Below are positions 6,352-48,793 of a stretch of DNA of 64,000 bases, one piece after another; within the stretch, counting starts at the first letter, position 1; the number at the start of each line of letters is the position of its first letter. The stretch is from the NCBI GenBank assembly GCA_038087875.1, contig CM075982.1:18228001-18292000 (forward strand), in the 5' to 3' direction. The translations under genes and the position numbers were made by a program. Source of the DNA: Malacoraja senta. Its lineage: Eukaryota. The notes beneath the pieces were generated by a model. That model worked only from the letters and a program-made list of their open reading frames with translations. It was not told where the DNA came from and made no database searches.

Positions 6352-8130
6352 TTATGCCATGATAATTTGTTGCCAATTGCTGATAAGCAATATTATTTAT
6401 TCAGGATTGCAATGAATATGTTGAAAATAGTCAATTGGTATTAATAGCAATAATAACATTAGTTACAGCACCACATCTGCAGAGTTATGCATTAGTCTGA
6501 AAAATCCATTCATTTTGCAATATGGAAACAGATTCACATTCACGATCATTGCTGTATACAGGAAATTACATATCACAGTGAACCTGATAGTTGTCATTTT
6601 CCTATCTTAGTTTTAAAATATTACATTGAGAAAAGATATTTTAGAAATTATGAATTACTGTGTTCGACCTGTGCTGTGGGTTTGTGGAGAAATTACTTCA
6701 TCCCCCCATTTTTCATCCTGGAATCAGTTTATAAGCATCTCATTCTAAAGAATTCAGAACTCCAAAAAGGATAGAATGGAAATGGAATTGAAGAGGACAT
6801 AAACGCATGGTTCAGAAGCCCTGATAGAAGAGAAATTAATGTATTGGAGTCTCATATCTAATTATATAATAAATCATAAAGTTGCCAGGGCATCAAGAGT
6901 TAATTAGCTTGATTCTTTAATTGCCACCGTTTTAATTGGCAATCTGTGGCACTCACTGTGGAACCATCACATGTTGTGAGAAAGCAGCAGGGGATTACAG
7001 GCGGTACAGTGTGGGCTCATTACCTAACACTTTCCTTCACTTTGTCCAAGATCACGTAATTTGTTAAAGAGACACAATAAGCGCAATTAATTAAACTAGG
7101 CTTTTTTTGTTGTTGCAATCTTCCCAGAGAGTGGATGCTGAAAAATGCCTGCCAGTTCAACTCATGTTTGGATGGTGCAATCGTCAAATAATGCAAAGCT
7201 GCTGCTATACATTGTACGCGGGATATTACAGCCTCAGCCTACTGCTGAGAGCATAAAGGGAGCAAAATTATCACATTAAACCTAAGGTAAAAGATCCTAA
7301 TAAAAACCAAGAAGAATGTAAACTTAGAATCACCATCGGCAGGAGTTCACTGAACAACTAACTCATTAGTTACCTCCAATTCATGTGATCTAAGAAACCG
7401 CTTAATTGAGCATATTTTAAGAACACAACCACTATATCCTTTCTTCTTATCACAAGCACCCTTCGTCAATGCGAGAGGATATCATAGGCTGGACTGTAAT
7501 CGGATAAGAATGTCGTGAGCTGTGTTATAGGTAAATTACAGTCCGCTAAATACCACGAGATGCCAGAAGTTGTCGAATGCCTCAAATAAAAACATTTTCT
7601 CATTTATAAATCCCACCTCGGAGGGGGTAGCTGTGGTGCTGGTGCTGTTGCGTTGCAAGTAACAACCTCGACATATTTTAAGAAGTTCAAGTTAACGATG
7701 CTACATTAAAAAAAACGATAGCAGATTAGTGCTTGAGCGTTGCGTGATCGACAAGGAGCCACCTTGTCGATCACCTGGCAGATTTCTTATGGGTTATGGA
7801 CAGCATTGATAAGATTGGGTTTATTTCACCAACTATTTCACATTGTGGAAAATGCTGGAACTACTCAGCAGGACAGGCCGCGTCTATCAGGAAGAGAAAC
7901 ATATTCAACGTTTCATCCGGAGTATTTCCGGCATTTTCTATTTTTGCTTTCGATTTCCAATAATTGTAGTCTTGTTTTTCATTTCACGTACGGAAATGAT
8001 GTCGCAAATTAGGGAAACGGCCAAGGAAATACCTTCTCTCAAATTATTTGAATACATTCCCAGTACTATGTTTAAGGGGATTCATTTCTTGGAAACTTTT
8101 ACGCAGCGCCAATACATGTAGTGCACTCAC

Positions 8131-8375
8131 CCCTGTTCCTCCATCATCTCCTGAAGCTCCATGCATTTGAGTTCGACCCTTCTTTTCCGTTCGTGATCTA
8201 GTATTTCCCGGTTGGCCTTTTTTACCACGAGTGGTTCCTTTTGCTTGGGGTCCCCTTCGGTGGTGTATTCCGCGCCACTTGCCTTCCTCTGCGGGGCTGC
8301 AGAGAGCATTTGCTGAGCGCAGCCATTTGTACAGCTCTCCCGAGCAGAGGGCAACCCGTCGCCGTTGTTGTGCAT
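8131..8375 (-). CDS. SRRM3: SRRM3 first coding exon (N-terminus plus start of the cwf21 domain); exon probably 8413-8131
   Basis: Translation ...PLVVKKANREILDHERKRRVELKCMELQEMMEEQG matches the SRRM3 cwf21 segment. ATG is in gccaacATG context. Donor GG|gtgagt at 8130 (phase 2). Acceptor tgtgttttctcttgcag| with AG at 8415-8414. The N-terminus is not the invariant MYNGIGL of SRRM2, and SRRM4 lacks cwf21. The next exon (YSEEEI...) was not found in the window. Confidence 0.9.
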
Positions 8376-9005
8376 GTTGGCGATCGAATTACCAATTCAG
8401 TTCTGCAAGGGAACTGCAAGAGAAAACACAGAACTTCAGTTCAACCCACAAGCAAAGTGGCAGATTAATGGAAGTAGAACTAGAGTACACAGAGGCCCGG
8501 TGGATAGACTATTTCGAGAACGTGGAGCCGATTTTATCATTACTTAAAACATTCCCCCATTTAAGTGCTATTTCGAACGTCTTGAATTTAGTTGCATCTT
8601 CACCATGTTACAAATTGCGATGCCACCCATAGTTAAAATGTAGTCAGCAACATCCGGTGGAAACGTTTTTTTACGGCCGGTCCCATGTTTAAAGATCTGC
8701 CACTCCACGGGACGCATGGTGTCAGCGATTACACTATTAACACACATTGCCCATTTCAGTGCTGAATTCAGTTACACATTATTCGAAAAAGTATTACCGT
8801 CTAAATCCCGAACTCTACTGGCCAAATACCCGGGTGTGCCAAATACAAGTGCATTCTTTACAGCCACATTAACAAATAACAACAAAATGTATTAATTTGC
8901 GTGTATTAGTATACACCGCCCCAACTTTAAGCAGTCCGGTGATATAAAATGATCCGGGCAAATGCCCACTAATCGCATTACCATCCGAGCAAATGCAGCT
9001 CGGTT

Positions 9006-9395
9006 GCCGCTATCCACGATGGTGAGAGCAGGATCCTACCTATTGTGTTGTCTACAAAGCCGGAAGCAGGATCGCTCGCCGCGGTGTTATTGTCCAAGGT
9101 GCTGAACAGTGAAACCGTCGCCTCGTTGCTGACAGCAGGAGCGAAGCCTGTTGTGTTGCTATCCGCGGTGCTGAAAGCAGGGGCGCTGCCGCGCTGCTGC
9201 TACCCACAGTGCGAAAGCAGCAGCTCGACTCTATGCTGCTAGCCGCGGTGCTGAAAATAGGAGTTCCAGTTGTTGTGTTGCTATCCGCGGTGCTGATAAG
9301 ACTTTAACTACATGCTGCAAGTTTCCCATAAACTGTAATATCCTGGCCTCACCATCCGTGGTGTAGCGGTGCGAGGCGCTGTGCAGGGTGCTGAG
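9006..9395 (-). promoter_or_regulatory. Tandem cluster of RE1/NRSE (REST-binding) motifs upstream of the SRRM3 coding exon
   Basis: Plus-strand 21-mers versus reverse RE1 consensus GGCGCTGTCCnnGGTGCTGAA: 9086 gttattgtccaaggtgctgaa; 9155 gttgctatccgcggtgctgaa; 9235 gctgctagccgcggtgctgaa; 9277 gttgctatccgcggtgctgat; 9375 ggcgctgtgcagggtgctgag. Degenerate copies start at 9006, 9046, 9113, 9196 and 9348. Confidence 0.85.
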
Positions 9396-10762
9396 ACTGT
9401 ACTTATATGTGCGAGGCGTTAGCAGCAGTCGACTCGTTGCTCGATATGATCAACGTCGAACGCCCCGGCGCTTCTGATGCTTCATTGTTCACTTCAGAAA
9501 TCGGTCGCGTCGATTGCCTGCGATAGTCAGATGATACAGGCATAACCAAATGCACTCCTGAAACGTTTCCCGTGTTCCTGTCCGCGGGACGATCAAATGT
9601 CTCCCTACCTATGGCTGCCTCACTGGAGAAAAGCTTGCAATGTGGCAATACGAAAGGGGGAGTTGCTTAGCCAGCTGTCCCGTGTAACACAATGCGCCGA
9701 CACTGCCAGCGCCTTGCATATATAAATACACCTCTCTACTCGTCAGCTCACCGAGAGGAAATAAGACCCAAATGCTCCCCACAGTTTAACGCTAGTTTCA
9801 GCCCGGCACTATAATTAGAAACGTGACATTAGCTCCATTCCCCAATCGCTCATCTTGAATGATAAAAAAAGACAATGACATTTGCAGCTCCCATATGGAT
9901 CTAAGATTAATTCCGTGCAAAAGTTGGCGAAACGACAATTGATAGCCTATATTTAGATTTAAGATTAAATACACCAGAGCTTGTATTTAATCTCCAATGT
10001 ACACGGGAATGAAATCGCTTGAGATTAATTTGCCGCCTCAAAAATACGGTCGTGGTTTATGAAAAAAAAGTATTTTTGACGACTTAAGTCACAAGTGAAA
10101 GTCTGTAAATTGATTAGATGTTGTTGTCACTACTTTAACAATTCACAAGAACAGAGACAACGCATCAAAATATAATTATTTCTGATTCTCAATTCTCCAG
10201 AATTTCAGGCGGGAATTAATAAACTGGCTTACTGCCTTTATAATCACCATAACTATGATTCTTATTATCTACAGAAAGTCTTCTAACTTTCTTCCATCCT
10301 TCCGGACTGATGTGATATTTTCCATTTCACCGAGGGAGTGAAAACTCTACGAGAAGGGCCAAGTAAACAGGTTTGATCTAATTAACGAGCACCGACCGTC
10401 TGCATTTAAGACCAATCGCTTTCGAATGCAATTTATCTGATTGGTTTGGGTGGAATAATCATTTGAACACGACGAGTTTCATAATGCTGCTCCAACGCAA
10501 GTCACACACGAGTGCATTAATAAACCGCTCGCTGAAAGCAAGACGCCAAAACAATTGAGCTCTGCTAACGTCATGGGGAGTGTTGGAGTGGGGGGAGAGA
10601 GATCTGATATTTTAATCTGAAGGGCTGCAACGACAGCATGACTTCAGGCGTCCATTTCTTTTTAACCCTTCGTGCTACAGGTTCCTTAAATTCGGATCCT
10701 GCTGAAGTGCGGACCTTCAACTTGGAACTTAATGCCGCTCAGAGTGAAAACATAACGCTTAC

Positions 10763-11050
10763 TTGTTCGGGAACAGGCCAATCGAAAATCTTCATTCGCG
10801 AACCAGTTTGTTGTGCAGACACTGGACTGCGCTCGTCGCCACAGTTCTTAAACCGCCGACACGAGGCATTGAAGGCGCAGTGTTACTTGCTCCTTTTACA
10901 CTTGGCTGCACTCGGTTTTCAACGAAGCATTTGCACACCATTTCACTTAAAAAAAAATCCCATAACTGTGAATTATTGATAGTAAAGATGGAGGGTGTGA
11001 CACCTTTCTTCAGAGGAAGGAGCCTAAGTACGCACACCAACGGCTCTCGT
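10763..11050 (-). other. Candidate non-coding first exon of SRRM3
   Basis: Minus-strand donor AA|gtaagc with GT at 10762-10761, at the edge of the CpG-rich block. An alternative donor (cg|gtgagc near 9750) also exists. The 5' end is a guess. Confidence 0.25.
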
Positions 11051-23989: not shown

Positions 23990-24180
23990 GGAGAATTAAA
24001 GTTACAGGTAACAGGGAGTTCAGGGTTGTCCCAGTGGAATGAACGCAGGTACTCCACAACCAATCAGTGTTTCATTTCTCCAAATGCATTTGATGAGATT
24101 ACATGTAGAGCAAGTGAATCGCGGCATCACCGATTGGGACTGTTTGGGTCTCTGGGTGGATGGGAAGAGATAAGAGGTGT
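23990..24180 (-). mobile_element. Degraded Penelope GIY-YIG region remnant
   Basis: caagtgaatc...gggactgtttgggtc is the reverse of a GPKQS...FTC-type segment, as at 49580-49620. Confidence 0.4.
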
Positions 24181-24544
24181 TATATCTTCTGCAGTGACAC
24201 TACTACAGTGAAAATTGTGAATGGGATACACTTATGAAGCAACAGAAATGGACACTTCATCATTTTAGTTACTGCATTGTAATAGTAGCAAAGGGTAATG
24301 AGGTTACTCAGATCATTGCTGTGATGCCCAGGATGCTTCTGCAGGCCAGTGACTTTTGCTGAGGTTCTCCTTCCACAGATGAAGATATTACCTGTGATTT
24401 CATTAACTAATGCGCAATGTAGGCTCCCTCATCTTTTGGCAAGGATTAACCGCTGCCAGTAATTCACATATTTGTTGCTACTTGTCCAGATGTATACCAC
24501 TCATCACTGTCTGTTAAAAGAAAGTTTCCATGAGCAGTCAGGCA

Positions 24545-27500
24545 ATATTGGCGGTGGCGATGAAGCCTCGGCAGTGGCGGTGGGGCCTCGTGGCCGACGG
24601 AGCCTCGCAGCGGCGGCAGTGAAGCCTCACGGGTCAACTGCCTGGTCAGCAGATCACTGTGAGGGGGGTGAGGGGGAAGAACTATGGAGGACTCGGCGTT
24701 GAGGGGACTGCCTTGAGGGAGGGACTCAAATAGAGAAAGCTAGTGGAAAATGTGGGAGGCAGGAGGCAGAGAAGGGAAGCACTCGGACCCAAAATGTAGG
24801 GGAGAAAGAAGAAAAAGATAATAAACAGAGAATAAGTGGTGGTGGGTTTCTTAAATGTGTATATTTTAATGCTAGGAGCATTGTAAGAAAGGTGGATGAG
24901 CTTAGAGCCTGGATTGACACCTGGAAGTATGATGTTGTGGCGATCAGTGAAACATGGTTGCAGGAGGGCTGTGATTGGCAAATAAATATTCCAGGATTTC
25001 GTTGCTTCAGGGGTGATAGAATTGGAGGGGCAAGAGGTGGGGGTGTTGCATTGCTTGTCAAGGAAGATATTACAGCAGTGCTTTGGCAGGATAGATTAGA
25101 GGGCTCGTCTAGGGAGGCTATTTGGGTGGAACTGAGAAATGGGAAAGGTGTAGCAACACTTATAGGGGTGTATTATAGACCGCCAAATGGGGAGCGAGAA
25201 TTGGAAGAGCAAATATGTAAGGAGATAGCAGATATTAGTAGTAAGCACAAGGTAGTGATTGTGGGAGATTTCAATTTTCCACACATAGACTGGGAAACAC
25301 ATTCTGTAAAAGGGCTGGATGGTTTGGAGTTTGTAAAATGTGTGCAAGATAGTTTTTTGCAGCAATACATAGAGGTACCTACTAGAGATGGGGCAGTGCT
25401 GGACCTCCTGTTAGGAAATGAGACAGGGCAAGTGGCGGAGGTATGCGTCGGGGAGCACTTCGGGTCCAGTGATCACAATACCATTAGTTTCAATATAATT
25501 ATGGAGAGGGTCAGAACTGGACCTAGGGTTGAGATTTTTGTTTGGAGAAAGGCTAACTTTGAGGAGATGTGAAAGGATTTAAAAGGAGTGAATTGGGACA
25601 TGTTGTTTTATGGGAAGGATGTAGAAGAAAAATGGAGGACATTTAAGGGTGAAATTTTAAGAGTACAGAATCTTTATGTCCCTGTTCGGTTGAAAGGAAA
25701 TAGTAAAAAATGGAAAGAGCCATGGTTTTCAAGGGAAATTGGACACGGTTCGGAAAAAGAGAGAGATCTACAATAATTATAGGCAGCATGGAGTAAATGA
25801 GGTGCTTGAGGAGTATAAAGAATGTAAAAAGAATATTAAGAAAGAAATTAGAAAAGCTAAAAGAAGATATGAGGTTGCTTTGGCAAGTAAGGTGAAAGTA
25901 AATCCAAAGGGTTTCTACAGCTATATTAATAGCAAAAGGATAACAAGGAATAAAATCGGTCCATTAGAGAGTCAGAGTGGACAGCTATCTGCAGAGCCAA
26001 AAGAGATGGGGGAGATATTGAACAATTTCTTTTCTTCGGTATTCACGAAGGAGAAGGATATGGAATTATGTGAGGTAAGGGAAACGAGCAGAGTAGCAAT
26101 GGAAACTGTGAGATTCAAAGAAGAGGAGGTGCGGACACTTTTGAAAAATATGAAAACGGATAAGTCTCCAGGTCCTGACAGGATATTCCCTAGGACATTG
26201 AGGGAAGTTAGTGTAGAAATAGCAGGGGCTATGACAGAAATATTTCAAATGTCATTAGAAACGGGAATAGTGCCGGAGGATTGGCGTACTGCGCATGTTG
26301 TTCCGTTGTTTAAAAAGGGTTCGAAGAGTAAACCTAGCAATTATAGACCTGTTAGTTTGACGTCAGTGGTGGGCAAATTAATGGAAAGGATACTTAAAGA
26401 TAATATATATAAGCATCTGGATAAGCAGGGTCTGATTAGGAACAGTCAACATGGATTTGTGCCTGGAAGGTCATGCTTGACTAATCTTCTTGAATTTTTC
26501 GAAGAGGTTACTAGGGAAATTGATGAGGGTAAAGCAGTGGATGTTGTCTATATGGACTTCAGTAAGGCCTTTGACAAGGTTCCTCATGGAAGGTTGGTTA
26601 AGAAGATTCAATTGTTGGGTATTAATGGTGGAGTAGCAAGATGGATTCAACAGTGGCTGAATGGGAGATGCCAGAGAGTAATGGTGGATGGCTGTTTGTC
26701 AGGTTGGAGGCCGGTGACTAGTGGGGTGCCTCAGGGGTCTGTGTTGGGTCCACTGTTGTTTGTCATGTACATCAATGATCTGGATGAAGGTGTGGAAAAT
26801 TGGATTAGTAAGTATGCAGATGATACTAAGATAGGTGGTGTTGTGGATAATGAAGTAGATTTTCAAAGTCTACAGAGAGATTTAGGCCATTTGGAAGAGT
26901 GGGCTGAAAGATGGCAGATGGAGTTTAATGCTGACAAATGTGAGGTGCTACATCTCGGCAGGACAAATCAAAATAGGACGTACACAGTAAATGGTAGCGA
27001 ATTGAGGAATGCAGTTGAACAGAGGGATCTAGGAATAACTGTGCATAGTTCCCTGAAGGTGGAATCTCATGTAGATAGGGTGGTAAAGAAAGCTTTTGGT
27101 GTGCTGGCCTTTATAAATCAGAGCATTGAATATAGAAGTTGGGATGTAATGTTAAAATTGTACAAGGCATTGGTGAGGCCAATTCTGGAGTATGGAGTAC
27201 AATTTTGGTCACCTAATTATAGGAAGGATGTCAACAAAATAGAGAGAGTACAGAGGAGATTTACTAGAATGTTGCCTGGGTTTCAGCAACTAAGTTACAG
27301 AGAAAGGTTGAACAAGTTAGGTCTTTATTCTTTGGAGCGCAGAAGGTTAAGAGGGGACTTGATAGAGGTCTTTAAAATTATGAGCGGGTTAGACAGAGTG
27401 GACGTGGATAAGCTTTTCCCATTGAGAGTAGGGAAGATTCAAACAAGGGGACATGACTTGAGAATTAAGGGACAGAAGTTTAGGGGGAACATTAGGGGGA

Positions 27501-28130
27501 ACTTCTTTACTCAGAGAGTGGTAGCTGTGTGGAATGAGCTTCCAGTGGAAGTGGTGGAGGCAGGTTCGATGTTATCCTTTAAAAATAGATTGGATGGGTA
27601 TATGGACGGGAAAGGAATGGAGGGTTATGGTCTGAGTGCAGGTAGATGGGACTAGGGGGAAGTATTTTATTTTTAATTAAAAAAAAAAAAAAAAAAAAAA
27701 AATTTAAATGTTCGGCACGGACTTGAAGGGCCGAGATGGCCTGTTTCCGTGCTGTTATGGTTATATGGTTATATGGTTATATGGTTATATGAGGGGGAGA
27801 GGGAGAAGAACAAAGGGAGACCTGGCGTGGGGGGGACGACTGGCAGTGTGGGGGGGGGGAGAACAATGATCAATGGAGGACCTGGTGTAGGGGGACCACT
27901 GTGAGTGGGGGCGGGGTGAACAATGGAGGTCCCGGAGCGGGGGTGTGGAGGGGAGGAGAGGGGAGGGGAGGAGAGTGGAAGGGAAGGGAGAGAACAAAGG
28001 AGGTGCTGGTGAGGATACCTTATAACTTCGTCAGCGGCATATGTGGCGACTATTTGTATACTTTGGGTATGCAAGCAAAACATTTCATTGTGCCTTGTCA
28101 CATGTGACAATAAACTATTCCATTCCATTT
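24545..28130 (+). mobile_element. G-rich minisatellite-bearing non-autonomous element interrupted by the CR1 (24545-24721 plus 27792-28130)
   Basis: The same unit (gggggaagaacaatggaggacc-like) lies on both sides of the CR1; ends in gtcacatgtgacaataaa(ctatt/ccatt)n. Confidence 0.6.
24722..27791 (+). mobile_element. CR1/HER1-type LINE with near-complete ORF2 (APE endonuclease + RT)
   Basis: CVYFNARSI, ISETW, GDFN, SDH (24840-25572). TGA at 25570-25572 and a frameshift near 25745. RT ORF 25739-27655 (QGSVLGP, YADD). (TATGGTTA)n tail 27755-27791. Confidence 0.95.
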
Positions 28131-44180: not shown

Positions 44181-45323
44181 CTTCTTCTTTCGTTTGTGGC
44201 AGCAGAGGTTATGTAACGTCCTCCAGGCGCTGTAACCAGTTCAATGTGCTGTTGTCGAGGGCCATGAGGTCTACCCCTCCACCAGGGGGGCGGAGGACAG
44301 CACAGTCAACGCGCAAATGACGTGCTGCATTGTTTGCTGGTCTGCTCCACACACGCAGGCTGCTGATGAACGCAGCTCCCAGCGATGCATGTTGGCGTTG
44401 AACCGGCCAACCCCTGTACGGAGCCGGTTCAGGGCGATCCACTCTTTGCGGGGCAGGTCCGAGCCGGGTGGGGCTGTGGTGTTCGGTGCAACAGTGAATT
44501 GCGGAGGTCGCAAAGTCTGTTCCCAGCTGGTTCTCCATGCTCCTAGTGTGTTGAAACCGGAGCCACAGAGGGTGGCTGCGTGACGGGAGAAGGGGCGACG
44601 AGATGGCAGGCATTGAGGTCCCAGTTGCTGTGAGTCCTGGGCGAGGTGGTGCAAAGGATGTTTGGCATCCGAGGGGGCCTTGCACACCAGCCTATGATTG
44701 AAATACTCTCTGCGAAACTTGGCGGGTGCGATACCTGCGAACACCGGCAGAAGATCCGTCGGAGTAGAGCATAGGCAGCCAGTGATGATCCGCATGGTGT
44801 CATTGAGGAGGGCGTCTAGCTTGCTAGTATAAGCGCTGCGGCACCATGCTGGGGCGGCGTACTCGGCAGCGCTGTACACGAGTGCAAGAGCACTGGTTCG
44901 GAGAGTAGATGTCCTGGCGCCCCTTGATGATCCAGCCAAGCAACGCAGGAGGTTGTTCCGCGCCGCGACTTTAGCACGGAGAGCTTCAAGATGTTGCTTG
45001 TTGGTCAGCTGCCGATCTAGTTTCGCCCCGAGGTATGTAGGAAATGGACTATAGGGTAGGGGTGACCCATTGAGGGTGACACTTAGCTGGCGTTGAGCTT
45101 CCTTGTTGTTCAGGTGAAAGGCCGTTGTAGTGGTTTTTGCCACACTCAGTTTTAGTTTCCAGGTCTTAAGGTAGCCTGCGATAAGGTCCATATCCACCGA
45201 GCGCCCATCCTCCACGTTTGACTAACTCCTGGGCTCATGTTGTCGACCTTCCCGTGGTGAGCCCTGTCAACTGACCTCAGTCAGGCAAACGACAACAAAC
45301 AGAGACAAAGCAGCAGAAATAAT
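44181..45323 (-). mobile_element. Internally deleted Ingi/Vingi-like LINE with 11-bp TSD
   Basis: ORF 44271-45215 (PTYLGAKLDRQL...RNNLLRCLAGS...TLRTSALALVYSAAEYAAPAW...CVCGADQQTMQH); no RNase H; (AAG)n tail. TSD acaaatgaagt at 44170-44180 and 45324-45334. Confidence 0.85.
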
Positions 45324-46945: not shown

Positions 46946-48793
46946 CAGATTCAGATTCAGATTCAACTTTATTGTCATTGTGCAGTTTACAGTACAGAGA
47001 CAACGAAATGCAGTTAGCATCTCCCTAGAAGAGCGTCATAAATATGAGCAATAAATAAATCTAATAAATCCTGGTGGGAGGAGTGTCCGGGGGGGGGGGG
47101 GGGGTGATTGGCAGTCACCGAGGTACAGTGTTGAGTAGTGTAACAGCCGCAGGGAAGAAGCTGTTCCTGGACCTGCTGGTCCGACAACGGAGAGACCTGT
47201 AGCGCCTCCCGGATGGTAGGAGGGTAAACAGTCTGTGGTTGGGGTGAGAGCAGTCCTTGGCGATGCTGAGCGCCCTTCGCAGACAACGCTTGCTTTGGAC
47301 AGACTCAATGGAGGGGAGTGAGGAACCGGTGATGCATTGGGCAATTTTCACCACCCTCTGCAGTGCTTTCCGGTCGGAGACAGAGCAGTTGCCATACCAT
47401 ACTGTGATACAGTTGGTAAGGATGCTCTCGATGGTGCAGCGGTAGAAGTTCACCAGAATCTGAGGAGACAGATGGACCTTCTTTAGTCTCCTCAGGAAGA
47501 AGAGACGCTGGTGAGCCTTCTTGACCAGAGTTGAGGTATTGTGGGTCCAAGAGAGGTCATCGGAGATGTTGACCCCCAGGAACCTGAAGCTGGAAACACG
47601 TTCCACCTCCGTCCCGTTAATGTGGATGGGGGTGTGCGTGCCGCCCCTAGACTTCCTGAAGTCTACAATGAGCTCCTTGGTCTTCTTGGAGTTAAGGGCC
47701 AGGTTGTTGTCAGCGCACCATGCTGCCAGGAGCTGGACCTCCTCCCTATAGGCCGACTCATCGTTGTTGCTGATGAGGCCAATCACCGTTGTATCATCTG
47801 CATACTTGATGATGGTGTTAGTACCATGTACAGGTGTGCAGTCGTAGGTGAAGAGGGAGTAGAGGAGGGGGCTCAGCACACAGCCCTGTGGAACTGTGTT
47901 CAGGGTGAGGGTTGAAGAGGTGTGCTTGTCTAACCTAGCAGACTGGGGTCTGTTGGTTAGAAAGTCCAGTATCCAGATGCAGAGGGAGGGGTCAATGCCC
48001 AGGTCACCGAGTTTGGTAATCAGTTTAGAGGGTATGATGGTGTTGAATGCTGAGCTGTAATCGATGAACAGCATTCTTACGTAAGTGTCTCTGTTGTCGA
48101 GGTGGGAGAGGGTGGAGTGAAGTGCCGTTGAGATGGCATCCTCCGTACTCCTGTTCTTGCGGTAGGCAAACTGGAAGGGATCCAATGTGGGGTGTAGGCA
48201 GCCTTTGAGGTGTGCCAGGACCAGCCTCTCGAAGCGCTTGGCGATGATGGGAGTAAGTGCAACTGGGCGGAAGTTGTTGAGGCTTGCCGCAGTGGAGTGT
48301 TTTGGCACCGGCACGATGGAGGTGGATTTAAAGCACGTGGGCACAACTGCTTGGGCAAGTGACAGGTTGAAGATGTCAGTCCAGACTTCTGTCAGCTGCG
48401 CAGCACAGGCCCCGAGGACGCGCCCGGGGATGCCGTCAGGGCCAGCAGCCTTACGTGCATTAGTCCTACTCAGTGCCATGTACACGTCGTAGGGGGTGAG
48501 TGTGAGGGGCTGGTGATCGGCAGGGAGCACCGCCTTGATGGCCATCTCTAGATTGTCCCTATCGAAGCCGCCATAGAAGTGGTTAAGCTCCTCAAGGAAG
48601 GAGGCATTGCTGGATGTGGGGGTGGTGTTGGTGGGTCTAAAGTCCGTGATGGCCTGGATGCCTTGCCACATGCGTCGGGTGTCGGAGTTGTTGTTGAAGT
48701 GCTCCTCAATCCTGAGCTTATGGCAGTGCTTGGCCTTCTTTATGCCCCTCTTCAGGTTAGCCCTGGATGAACTGTAGGCTCGGGCATCGCCTG
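46946..48793 (-). mobile_element. Rex1/Babar-like LINE, 5'-truncated, with open RT ORF 47115-48671
   Basis: KAAGPDG, FRPVALT, QFAY, DYSSAFNTI, PQGCVLSPLLY, KYADD; (AATCTG)n tail near 46946-46965. Confidence 0.93.

What the first reader, a model, noticed from the sequence alone, without database searches (positions are those of the whole stretch)
9006..9395. Tandem ~40-bp array of REST/NRSF RE1 sites in front of the SRRM3 coding exon: a possible amplified neuronal silencer
Seen: about 10 co-oriented RE1-like 21-mers (starts 9006, 9046, 9086, 9113, 9155, 9196, 9235, 9277, 9348, 9375), mostly 39-42 bp apart. Six are followed by a shared agcagga-like linker, so the block arose by tandem duplication of an RE1-containing unit. 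In five copies the GGTGCTGA half-site is perfect while the linkers have diverged, which suggests selection on the motifs. Known: REST binds TTCAGCACCnnGGACAGCGCC and represses neuronal genes, and SRRM3/SRRM4 drive neural microexon splicing including the REST-inactivating splice, forming a mutual-antagonism loop. Inference: a graded strong/weak multi-site array could give a switch-like REST response, and the REST-SRRM3 circuit may already be wired in cartilaginous fish. I cannot say whether this array has been described.
Basis: partly seen in the sequence, partly recalled or inferred. Interest (0 to 1): 0.85.

Follow-up and report, generated by a model that had tools for sequence, protein, structure and literature searches.

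The report
Ancient RE1 silencer array at srrm3
Just upstream of the start codon of the neural splicing-factor gene srrm3, this cartilaginous fish has a row of about nine 40-base repeat units built around the binding motif of the neuronal-gene repressor REST; two shark species have the same row at the same place, so REST control of srrm3, known from mouse, is probably very old.

Summary
The stretch 9006-9395 is a degenerate, single-copy ~40-bp tandem array, and all its units lie on the minus strand.

- **Motif quality:** five units (starts 9086, 9155, 9235, 9277, 9375) are strong RE1/NRSE matches. They are the five best-scoring sites in the 64-kb window. Site 9006 is weak, 9113, 9196 and 9348 are remnants, and 9046 is not RE1-like in this species.
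- **Gene context:** the array lies 630-1020 bp upstream of the ATG (8375) of a minus-strand srrm3 cwf21 exon, inside the window's strongest CpG island.
- **Transcript structure:** spliced RNA contigs from close relatives show the array is not simply intron 1. It lies between two alternative 5' splice sites (9353 and 9040), so it is 5'-UTR exon in one isoform and intron in another.
- **Conservation:** the same array, unit for unit, lies before the orthologous exon in whale shark and bamboo shark, where two units are perfect RE1s. The consensus of 27 units is the canonical RE1, and the linkers carry little information. No such cluster was found in the frog, gecko, mammal or carp loci retrieved.

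Best reading (about 0.7): an ancient multi-site REST-dependent silencer of srrm3. Binding and any switch-like behaviour are inferred, not shown. Tandem head-to-tail RE1s and REST control of Srrm3 are both published, so this is a new member of a known kind.

The parts
9375..9395 (-). Unit U1: strong RE1-like site (left half-site perfect; right half GCACAG), 22 nt upstream of the conserved 5' splice site at 9353
   Evidence: 24.0 bits. Orthologous sites in whale shark (L001 8964, 22.3 bits) and bamboo shark (L006 8921, 25.1 bits). 13 of 14 informative positions are invariant in the three species.
9277..9297 (-). Unit U3: strong RE1-like site (right half GGATAG). Shares an identical 26-mer with U6; the orthologous unit is decayed in both sharks.
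   Evidence: 23.4 bits. No change in 7 close relatives.
9235..9255 (-). Unit U4: strong RE1-like site (right half GGCTAG)
   Evidence: 22.0 bits. Orthologues L001 9104 (19.3 bits) and L006 9061 (21.6 bits). No change in 7 close relatives.
9155..9175 (-). Unit U6: best RE1-like site in the window (right half GGATAG)
   Evidence: 25.2 bits. Orthologues L001 9183 (19.1 bits) and L006 9124 (25.8 bits, a perfect consensus match). Relatives differ at 9157 (flank position 19, toward consensus) and, in one clade, at 9162 (position 14).
9086..9106 (-). Unit U8: strong RE1-like site (right half GGACAA)
   Evidence: 20.3 bits. Orthologue L001 9266 (16.0 bits). No change in 7 close relatives.
9006..9026 (-). 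Unit U10: weak RE1-like site, intronic in all observed spliced forms
   Evidence: 13.7 bits; 9 window positions score this high or higher.
9046..9066 (-). Unit U9: decayed unit, not RE1-like in this species. The orthologous shark units score 13.0 and 13.5 bits.
9113..9133 (-). Unit U7: decayed RE1 remnant (5.7 bits). The orthologous units are strong in whale shark (L001 9224, 21.7 bits) and bamboo shark (L006 9206, 27.6 bits).
9196..9216 (-). Unit U5: decayed RE1 remnant (6.6 bits), evolving fast. Five of its 21 positions vary among close relatives.
9040..9682 (-). 5' non-coding exon (long form), seen in an RNA contig of a close relative. It contains units U1-U9.
   Evidence: a 2076-nt X21 contig lies on 9682-9040, is joined to 8413-8129, and then runs on into the next coding exon. 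The skipped stretch 8414-9039 has GT..AG ends on the minus strand.
9353..9516 (-). Short internal form of the same exon, with acceptor at 9516 and donor at 9353 (GTGAGG). Only U1 stays exonic.
   Evidence: X23 joints 10762>9516 and 9353>8413. The donor sequence ATG|GTGAG is conserved in both sharks.
8414..9039 (-). Intron between the long 5' exon and the first coding exon. Its donor (GTAGGA at 9039) is not conserved in the sharks.
8131..8413 (-). First coding exon of srrm3 (ATG at 8375; cwf21 domain; donor GTGAGT at 8130)
   Evidence: best named homologues are srrm3 of sharks, all carrying Pfam PF08312. One search gives the names.
10763..10890 (-). Upstream alternative 5' exon, spliced either to 9516 or directly to 8413
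   Evidence: X23 joints 10763>8413 and 10762>9516
8414..11000 (.). CpG island around the srrm3 5' end
   Evidence: CpG observed/expected is 0.86-1.17 here, against 0.39 for the whole window.

Best explanation
The stretch is an old tandem amplification of a ~41-bp unit. Each unit is a 21-bp RE1/NRSE (the REST-binding site) plus a ~20-bp linker. The array lies in the CpG-island 5' region of srrm3 and straddles the first exon-intron boundary.

The most likely function is a homotypic cluster of REST-binding sites. In non-neural cells and neural progenitors, REST would occupy several units and recruit its co-repressors, keeping srrm3 off. When REST falls or is inactivated by splicing in neurons, srrm3 is released. 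This part is inferred from the mammalian REST-SRRM3/4 loop: SRRM3 then helps keep REST inactive.

Several neighbouring sites, each slightly sub-optimal in this species, would raise occupancy at low REST levels. They would also make the element robust to the loss of single units, which fits the unit-by-unit turnover seen between lineages.

**Shown:** motif content, tandem structure, position relative to the exons, single-copy status, and conservation across elasmobranchs.

**Inferred:** REST binding, repression, and any dosage or threshold behaviour.
For: 1. **Motif.** Five sites within 310 bp match the published NRSE consensus with at most 1 mismatch, all in gene orientation. The expected count is 0.62 per 64 kb and 0.012 in local shuffles. 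They are the five top-scoring sites in the window.
2. **Gene.** The next exon downstream encodes the srrm3 cwf21 N-terminus. Srrm3 is a REST target in mouse and in human cells (PMC7652395; PMC4459148).
3. **Position.** The array lies in a CpG island, 630-1020 bp upstream of the ATG, and is transcribed as 5' exon or first intron.
4. **Deep conservation.**
   - Whale shark and bamboo shark carry co-oriented RE1 clusters with 41-42-bp spacing at the same distance from the orthologous ATG. Two bamboo shark units fit the consensus perfectly.
   - The units align one to one.
   - Starting from the skate sites and mutating neutrally at 25-40% divergence, keeping at least 3 of 5 orthologous sites at 19 bits or more has P <= 0.0014.
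5. **Motif versus linker.**
   - The consensus of 27 units from three species is TTCAGCACCGTGGACAGCAAC. Mean information is 0.98 bit at informative RE1 positions against 0.21 bit in the linkers.
   - Three-species invariance is 59% at those positions, 47% in linkers and 38% in flanks (Fisher P = 0.028 for informative positions versus linkers).
   - Among 7 close relatives, 3 of 105 bases vary inside the strong sites. Outside them, 20 of 285 vary and there are 6 indels.
6. **Not a dispersed repeat.** Each of five related genomes lays exactly one contig on the array.
7. **Precedent.** Head-to-tail tandem RE1s in groups of up to five occur in the human genome. Paired sites at SNAP25 and L1CAM recruit REST better than single sites (PMC1557810).
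Against: - There is no binding or expression-perturbation data for any cartilaginous fish.
- Each of the five strong sites in this species has one mismatch in the right half-site. In U1 it falls on a normally near-invariant G.
- My weight matrix is an approximation from memory.
- The five sites are not independent, because they descend from one duplicated unit. The enrichment statistics therefore overstate the case for five separately selected sites.
- The close-relative test is weak (Fisher P = 0.09 for substitutions alone, 0.024 with indels).
- The linkers and flanks are also fairly conserved between skate and sharks. Part of the motif conservation may reflect slow elasmobranch evolution or other constraints on a 5' UTR or promoter.
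- No comparable cluster was found in the frog, gecko, mammal or carp loci retrieved. The array itself is therefore not the ancestral vertebrate arrangement.
- I did not check for a REST gene in this genome.
Confidence: 0.7

Rival explanations
1. Mostly relic array. One or two units (for example U1, next to the conserved splice donor) are the working RE1. The others are neutral by-products of replication slippage or unequal exchange that still look like RE1, and are occasionally refreshed by gene conversion.
For: - All units descend from one duplication.
- About half the units have decayed in each species, and a different set in each.
- U3 and U6 share an identical 26-mer in this species while U3 is decayed in the sharks, which looks like conversion.
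- U1 is by far the best conserved unit (13 of 14 informative positions).
Against: - Each of the three lineages keeps 4-5 sites of about 19 bits or more, after a split old enough to leave only ~60% identity at aligned positions (gaps excluded) of the array, about the same as in the neighbouring intron.
- Neutral retention of that many sites is improbable.
- Decayed units evolve fast among close relatives (5 of 21 positions in U5), while the strong ones barely change.
Confidence: 0.14
2. RNA-level element. The repeats act in the pre-mRNA or the 5' UTR, as splicing regulators for the choice between the donors at 9353 and 9040 or as translational control elements. The likeness to RE1 is secondary.
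For: - The array is transcribed and lies exactly between two alternative 5' splice sites.
- A 22-nt, 82%-complementary inverted repeat (9018-9039 and 9335-9356) overlaps both donors.
- The long 5' UTR carries 5 upstream ATGs against 2 in the short form.
- All units share the orientation of the gene.
Against: - The donor at 9040 and the inverted repeat are not conserved in the sharks, while the RE1 cores are.
- The conserved columns reproduce both half-sites and the canonical 2-nt spacer of a 21-bp DNA motif.
- Head-to-tail orientation is what tandem duplication produces anyway (PMC1557810).
Confidence: 0.07
3. Binding sites for a different DNA-binding factor, or no function at all (a chance resemblance within a slowly evolving CpG island).
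For: There is no direct binding evidence, every site in this species is imperfect, and the surrounding non-coding sequence is also alignable with sharks.
Against: - A match of 16-17 out of 17 positions repeated in several units and three lineages is very specific.
- The target gene is an established REST target in mammals.
Confidence: 0.05

Closest known systems
Tandem head-to-tail RE1 clusters of the human genome (Johnson et al. 2006, PMC1557810; pairs at SNAP25, L1CAM and KCNN4; groups of up to five motifs)
   Same: - Several RE1s lie within 100 bp of one another, all head to tail.
- Site strengths are mixed.
- The origin was attributed to local tandem duplication.
- The proposed benefit is better REST recruitment at low REST concentration.
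   Different: - Here the array has about nine or ten recognisable ~41-bp units with a regular period.
- It is conserved unit for unit across elasmobranch lineages, with turnover in which units are strong.
- It overlaps an alternatively spliced 5' exon.
- I could not check whether mammalian SRRM3 is on the published list of tandem RE1s, because the supplement is not held.
REST-SRRM4/SRRM3 mutual antagonism in mouse neurons and hair cells (Nakano et al. 2019, 2020, PMC7652395; Lee et al. 2015, PMC4459148)
   Same: The gene is the same (srrm3, cwf21-containing paralogue), and so is the predicted logic: REST represses srrm3, and SRRM3/4 inactivate REST by splicing.
   Different: - The mammalian work shows expression dependence on REST. 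The papers I could read do not describe an RE1 array.
- The mammalian contig I retrieved shows no strong RE1 within 0.8 kb upstream or 4.8 kb downstream of the first coding exon.
- Here the evidence is sequence only.
Multiple scattered NRSEs of the protocadherin clusters (Tan et al. 2010, PMC2926608)
   Same: Many NRSEs serve one neural locus. They are present from elephant shark to human, and non-canonical variants still bind REST in EMSA.
   Different: Those sites are dispersed over a gene cluster, one per promoter region. They are not a short-period tandem array at a single promoter.

Membership tests
RE1/NRSE (REST-binding element) | Bipartite ~21-bp motif: left half TCAGCACC and right half GGACAG, separated by 2 nt | tested here: met
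   Five sites match the 17-bp degenerate consensus with at most 1 mismatch. The consensus of 27 units is the canonical sequence. Two bamboo shark units match perfectly.
RE1/NRSE (REST-binding element) | Located in or near a neuron-restricted gene (promoter, 5' UTR or first intron) | tested here: met
   The srrm3 5' exon/intron 1 inside a CpG island. The neural restriction of srrm3 is taken from mouse literature.
RE1/NRSE (REST-binding element) | Motif positions conserved beyond the surrounding sequence | tested here: met
   Searches are clear. The close-relative test points the same way but is weak.
RE1/NRSE (REST-binding element) | Bound by REST (EMSA, ChIP) | not testable with these tools
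   No binding data are available for cartilaginous fish.
RE1/NRSE (REST-binding element) | Confers REST-dependent repression | not testable with these tools
   Needs reporter assays or REST perturbation.
RE1/NRSE (REST-binding element) | A REST orthologue is encoded in the same genome | not tested
   Only this window is available. NRSEs have been predicted in elephant shark, and selected non-canonical NRSEs from several vertebrates bound REST in EMSA (PMC2926608).
Tandem head-to-tail RE1 cluster (Johnson et al. 2006) | Two or more RE1s within 100 bp, all in the same orientation | tested here: met
   Strong sites start at 9086, 9155, 9235, 9277 and 9375, all on the minus strand, at spacings of 69, 80, 42 and 98 bp.
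Tandem head-to-tail RE1 cluster (Johnson et al. 2006) | Arose by local tandem duplication (the flanking linker is shared between units) | tested here: met
   Direct-repeat families extend beyond the motif, with identical 26-mers and an AGCAGGA-like linker.
Hypervariable minisatellite | High unit identity and copy-number differences between close relatives | tested here: not met
   Tandem Repeats Finder reports no array. Seven related species keep the same unit number, with only 1-6-bp indels. Unit gain and loss is seen only between distant lineages.
Transposon-borne RE1 family | Many dispersed copies of the RE1 with its flanks | tested here: not met
   Exactly one contig per related genome lies on the array at 82-85% likeness or more. 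By contrast, a nearby 40-bp element (7920-7959) attracts many contigs.

The most novel reading that the evidence does not exclude
The array is a selection-maintained homotypic cluster of mostly sub-optimal REST sites. It has been kept for roughly the age of the elasmobranchs by a balance of unit decay, duplication and conversion. It sets an ultrasensitive REST threshold for the bistable REST-SRRM3 switch. In skates, its partial exonisation between two 5' splice sites additionally links REST occupancy to 5'-UTR isoform choice.
Probability: 0.2. Interest if true: 0.65.

Novelty: new member of a known kind. Interest (0 to 1): 0.5.

Why it matters
**Age of the circuit.** The REST-SRRM3/4 double-negative loop is a central switch of vertebrate neuronal identity and microexon splicing. 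So far it has been described functionally only in mammals. A conserved multi-RE1 element at srrm3 in skates and sharks suggests the transcriptional arm of that loop is at least as old as the elasmobranch ancestor. It also gives a compact, testable cis-element for experiments in skate or catshark embryos.

**A model for site clusters.** The array is a natural example of a homotypic binding-site cluster that survives over long times through turnover of its individual units. That is useful for studying how site number and affinity shape repressor thresholds.

Tried and rejected
- **Tandem Repeats Finder** at minimum score 30 finds no array in 8000-10500. The units are below its identity threshold, so I defined them with the repeat finder and motif scanning.
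- **Dispersed repeat or transposon origin** is rejected, because there is a single contig per related genome.
- **Hypervariable minisatellite** is rejected, because copy number is stable among close relatives.
- **DNA I could not obtain.**
  - The catshark Scyliorhinus torazame locus could not be fetched: the file was too large, and the RefSeq isoform is not on record.
  - The Callorhinchus and rat proteins are not on record. Chimaera and rodent could therefore not be examined.
  - The contig of the close relative behind P0003 had no DNA.
- **Other vertebrates.** The frog, gecko, unnamed mammal and carp loci show no RE1 cluster. However, the frog and mammal contigs hold only 2.1 kb and 0.8 kb upstream.
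- **Literature.**
  - The list of human tandem RE1s in Johnson 2006 is not held.
  - No paper combining srrm3 with ChIP-seq and intron 1 was found.
  - The ten best-ranked papers of a search combining srrm3 with the cartilaginous-fish terms do not mention srrm3.
- **Inverted repeat over the two splice donors**. I considered it as a splice-site-bridging stem, but it is not conserved in the sharks.
- **TATA-like sequence near 9719-9729.** I considered it as the proximal promoter, but it is not conserved in whale shark.
- **Weight matrix.** I used no real JASPAR matrix. The scoring matrix is my own approximation and is used only for ranking.

Full report
**What is in the sequence**

I read 8700-9900 directly. 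The published degenerate NRSE consensus is quoted as NTYAGMRCCNNRGMSAG in PMC4430910. With at most one mismatch it matches six places in the 64-kb window. Five of them lie at 9090-9394, all on the minus strand. The expected count is 0.62, and none of 100 shuffles reached six. In dinucleotide shuffles of 9006-9395 alone the mean is 0.012 matches, against five observed.

I also scored the window with an approximate REST weight matrix. I wrote it from memory of the published logo, so it serves only for ranking. The five sites starting at 9155, 9375, 9277, 9235 and 9086 score 20-25 of a possible 32.7 bits. They rank 1-5 among 127,960 positions, and the best site elsewhere scores 16.6.

- 9006 is weak (13.7 bits).
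- 9196, 9113 and 9348 are remnants (4.5-6.6 bits).
- 9046 is not RE1-like in this species (-14.6 bits).

Each strong site has a perfect left half-site (GGTGCTGA on the plus strand) and one departure in the right half-site.

The tandem origin is real. Direct-repeat families extend beyond the motif, spacings are 40-42 bp or multiples, and an AGCAGGA-like linker recurs. The 26-mers at 9149-9174 and 9271-9296 are identical. Tandem Repeats Finder reports nothing there because the units are too diverged.

**Gene context**

A minus-strand ORF at 8127-8375 encodes the cwf21 N-terminus of srrm3. Its best named homologues are shark srrm3 proteins, and every hit carries Pfam PF08312.

CpG observed/expected is 0.86-1.17 over 8414-11000, against 0.39 for the whole window. 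The array therefore lies in a CpG island.

Assembled RNA contigs from two closely related species (about 97% identical) were laid on the window.
- One contig runs 9682-9040, is joined to 8413-8129, and then continues into the next coding exon. The loose end reads through to the conserved ...EEQGY.QEEIRQKV sequence.
- The skipped stretch 8414-9039 has GT..AG ends on the minus strand.
- A second species also shows joints 9353>8413, 10763>8413 and 10762>9516.

Four of the five strong sites thus lie between two alternative 5' splice sites (9353, GTGAGG; and 9040, GTAGGA). They are 5'-UTR exon in one form and intron in the other. U1 (9375) is exonic in both of those forms; a third form that splices the distal exon directly from 10763 to 8413 skips it. 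The tool labelled one run 'probably DNA', but the contig carries splice joints, so it derives from RNA.

**Close relatives**

Contigs from seven coded species were laid on the array. Each DNA run gives exactly one contig across the array, so it is single-copy and not a dispersed repeat. A 40-bp element at 7920-7959, by contrast, attracts many contigs.

All seven species have the same number of units, and the only indels are 1-6 bp.

Variable positions are distributed as follows:

| Region | Size | Substitutions | Indels |
|---|---|---|---|
| Five strong 21-mers | 105 bp | 3 | 0 |
| Rest of 9006-9395 | 285 bp | 20 | 6 |

- Of the three changes inside strong sites, one lies in the spacer, one in the low-information flank, and one at position 14 in one clade.
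- Fisher P is 0.09 for substitutions alone and 0.024 with indels.
- The informative core shows 1 variable position in 70 (P = 0.058).
- The decayed unit at 9196 alone holds five variable positions.

This is suggestive but weak at such shallow depth.

**Deep conservation**

The exon protein found orthologous ORFs in sharks, and DNA was retrieved for two of them.

| Species (locus) | ATG of cwf21 exon | Co-oriented RE1-like sites upstream |
|---|---|---|
| Whale shark (L001) | 10001 | 8964, 9104, 9183, 9224, 9266, 9308 |
| Bamboo shark (L006) | 10001 | 8921, 9061, 9124, 9165, 9206, 9290 |

- In whale shark the spacings are 41-42 bp or multiples.
- Two bamboo shark sites fit the 17-bp consensus perfectly (25.8 and 27.6 bits).
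- In both sharks the distance to the ATG is the same as in the window.
- Alignments show one-to-one orthology of units. The ATG|GTGAG donor next to U1 is conserved. The 9040 donor is not conserved. One unit has been gained or lost between the two sharks.
- The set of strong units differs by lineage. U1, U4 and U6 are strong in all three, U3 only in the window's species, and U7 only in the sharks.

Three tests compare motif and linker.
- **Neutral simulation.** I mutated the skate sites at 25-40% divergence. Keeping at least three of five orthologous sites at 19 bits or more has P <= 0.0014.
- **Unit logo.** The consensus of all 27 units is TTCAGCACCGTGGACAGCAAC, the canonical RE1. Mean information is 0.98 bit at informative RE1 positions and 0.21 bit in the linkers. 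The units are anchored on the motif and orthologous rows are not independent, so this overstates the contrast somewhat.
- **Three-species invariance.** It is 59% at informative positions, 47% in linkers and 38% in flanks (Fisher P = 0.028 for informative positions versus linkers).

**Outside elasmobranchs**

The loci retrieved for a frog, a gecko, an unnamed mammal and a carp show no cluster near the first coding exon. The frog and mammal contigs hold little upstream sequence. Chimaera, catshark and rat DNA could not be obtained.

**Comparison with what is known**

- Srrm3 is described as a REST target in mouse, and SRRM3/4 inactivate REST by splicing (PMC7652395). SRRM3 expression responds to REST in human cells (PMC4459148).
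- Johnson et al. 2006 reported 27 human RE1 pairs within 100 bp, some in groups of up to five. All are head to tail, which the authors attributed to tandem duplication. They also noted that paired sites at SNAP25 and L1CAM recruit REST better than single sites (PMC1557810).
- NRSEs have been predicted in the elephant shark protocadherin cluster, and selected non-canonical NRSEs from the vertebrates surveyed bound REST in EMSA (PMC2926608).
- None of the papers I could search and read describes an RE1 array at srrm3 or srrm3 regulation in cartilaginous fish. The list of human tandem RE1s was not available.

**Verdict**

The feature is real. It is an ancient, single-copy, degenerate ~41-bp RE1 array at the 5' end of srrm3, conserved across elasmobranchs with turnover of its units. 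The most likely function is a multi-site REST-dependent silencer (about 0.7).

The rivals are:
- an array with only one or two working sites;
- an RNA-level element tied to the alternative splice donors;
- another binding factor, or no function.

REST binding, repression and any threshold behaviour remain to be tested. This is a new instance of a known kind of element at a gene already known as a REST target, so interest is moderate.

Noticed in passing
window 9018-9039 and 9335-9356: A 22-nt inverted repeat, 82% complementary, lies exactly over the two alternative 5' splice sites (9040 and 9353). In the pre-mRNA it could loop out the array. It is not conserved in whale shark or bamboo shark.
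   Followed up: partly
window 9672-9677: A CAGCTG E-box lies within 10 bp of the 5' end (9682) of the long RNA contig. It is conserved in whale shark within an otherwise patchy alignment, and could be a proneural bHLH site of the proximal srrm3 promoter.
   Followed up: no
window 10763-10890: An upstream alternative 5' exon of srrm3 is spliced either to 9516 or directly to the coding exon at 8413. The gene therefore has at least two 5' exon configurations. A further loose end at 10890 suggests yet another exon upstream.
   Followed up: partly
window 7920-7959: A ~40-bp segment attracts many separate contigs from related genomes at 85-90% likeness. It is a piece of a dispersed repeat in the intron downstream of the srrm3 coding exon.
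   Followed up: no
window 44271-45215 and 47115-48671 (minus strand): Long ORFs with non-LTR retrotransposon reverse-transcriptase-like sequence lie in a GC-rich block. This accounts for the second CpG- and GC-rich region of the window and for several weak RE1-like scores there.
   Followed up: no
window 24000-28000: A strong positive GC skew (0.26-0.54 over 4 kb) with no tandem repeat reported at score 80 or more. Unexplained.
   Followed up: no
window 9572-9587: An isolated right-half RE1 plus linker fragment (CCGCGGACAGGAACAC on the sense strand) lies upstream of the array. It is 88% like the corresponding part of the repeat unit and is not conserved in whale shark.
   Followed up: partly
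L003 11055 and L004 2057: In the gecko and the mammal contig, single weak RE1-like sites (18.4 and 15.7 bits) lie in gene orientation about 850-900 bp downstream of the first coding exon. They could be the amniote counterpart of REST control of SRRM3, or chance.
   Followed up: no
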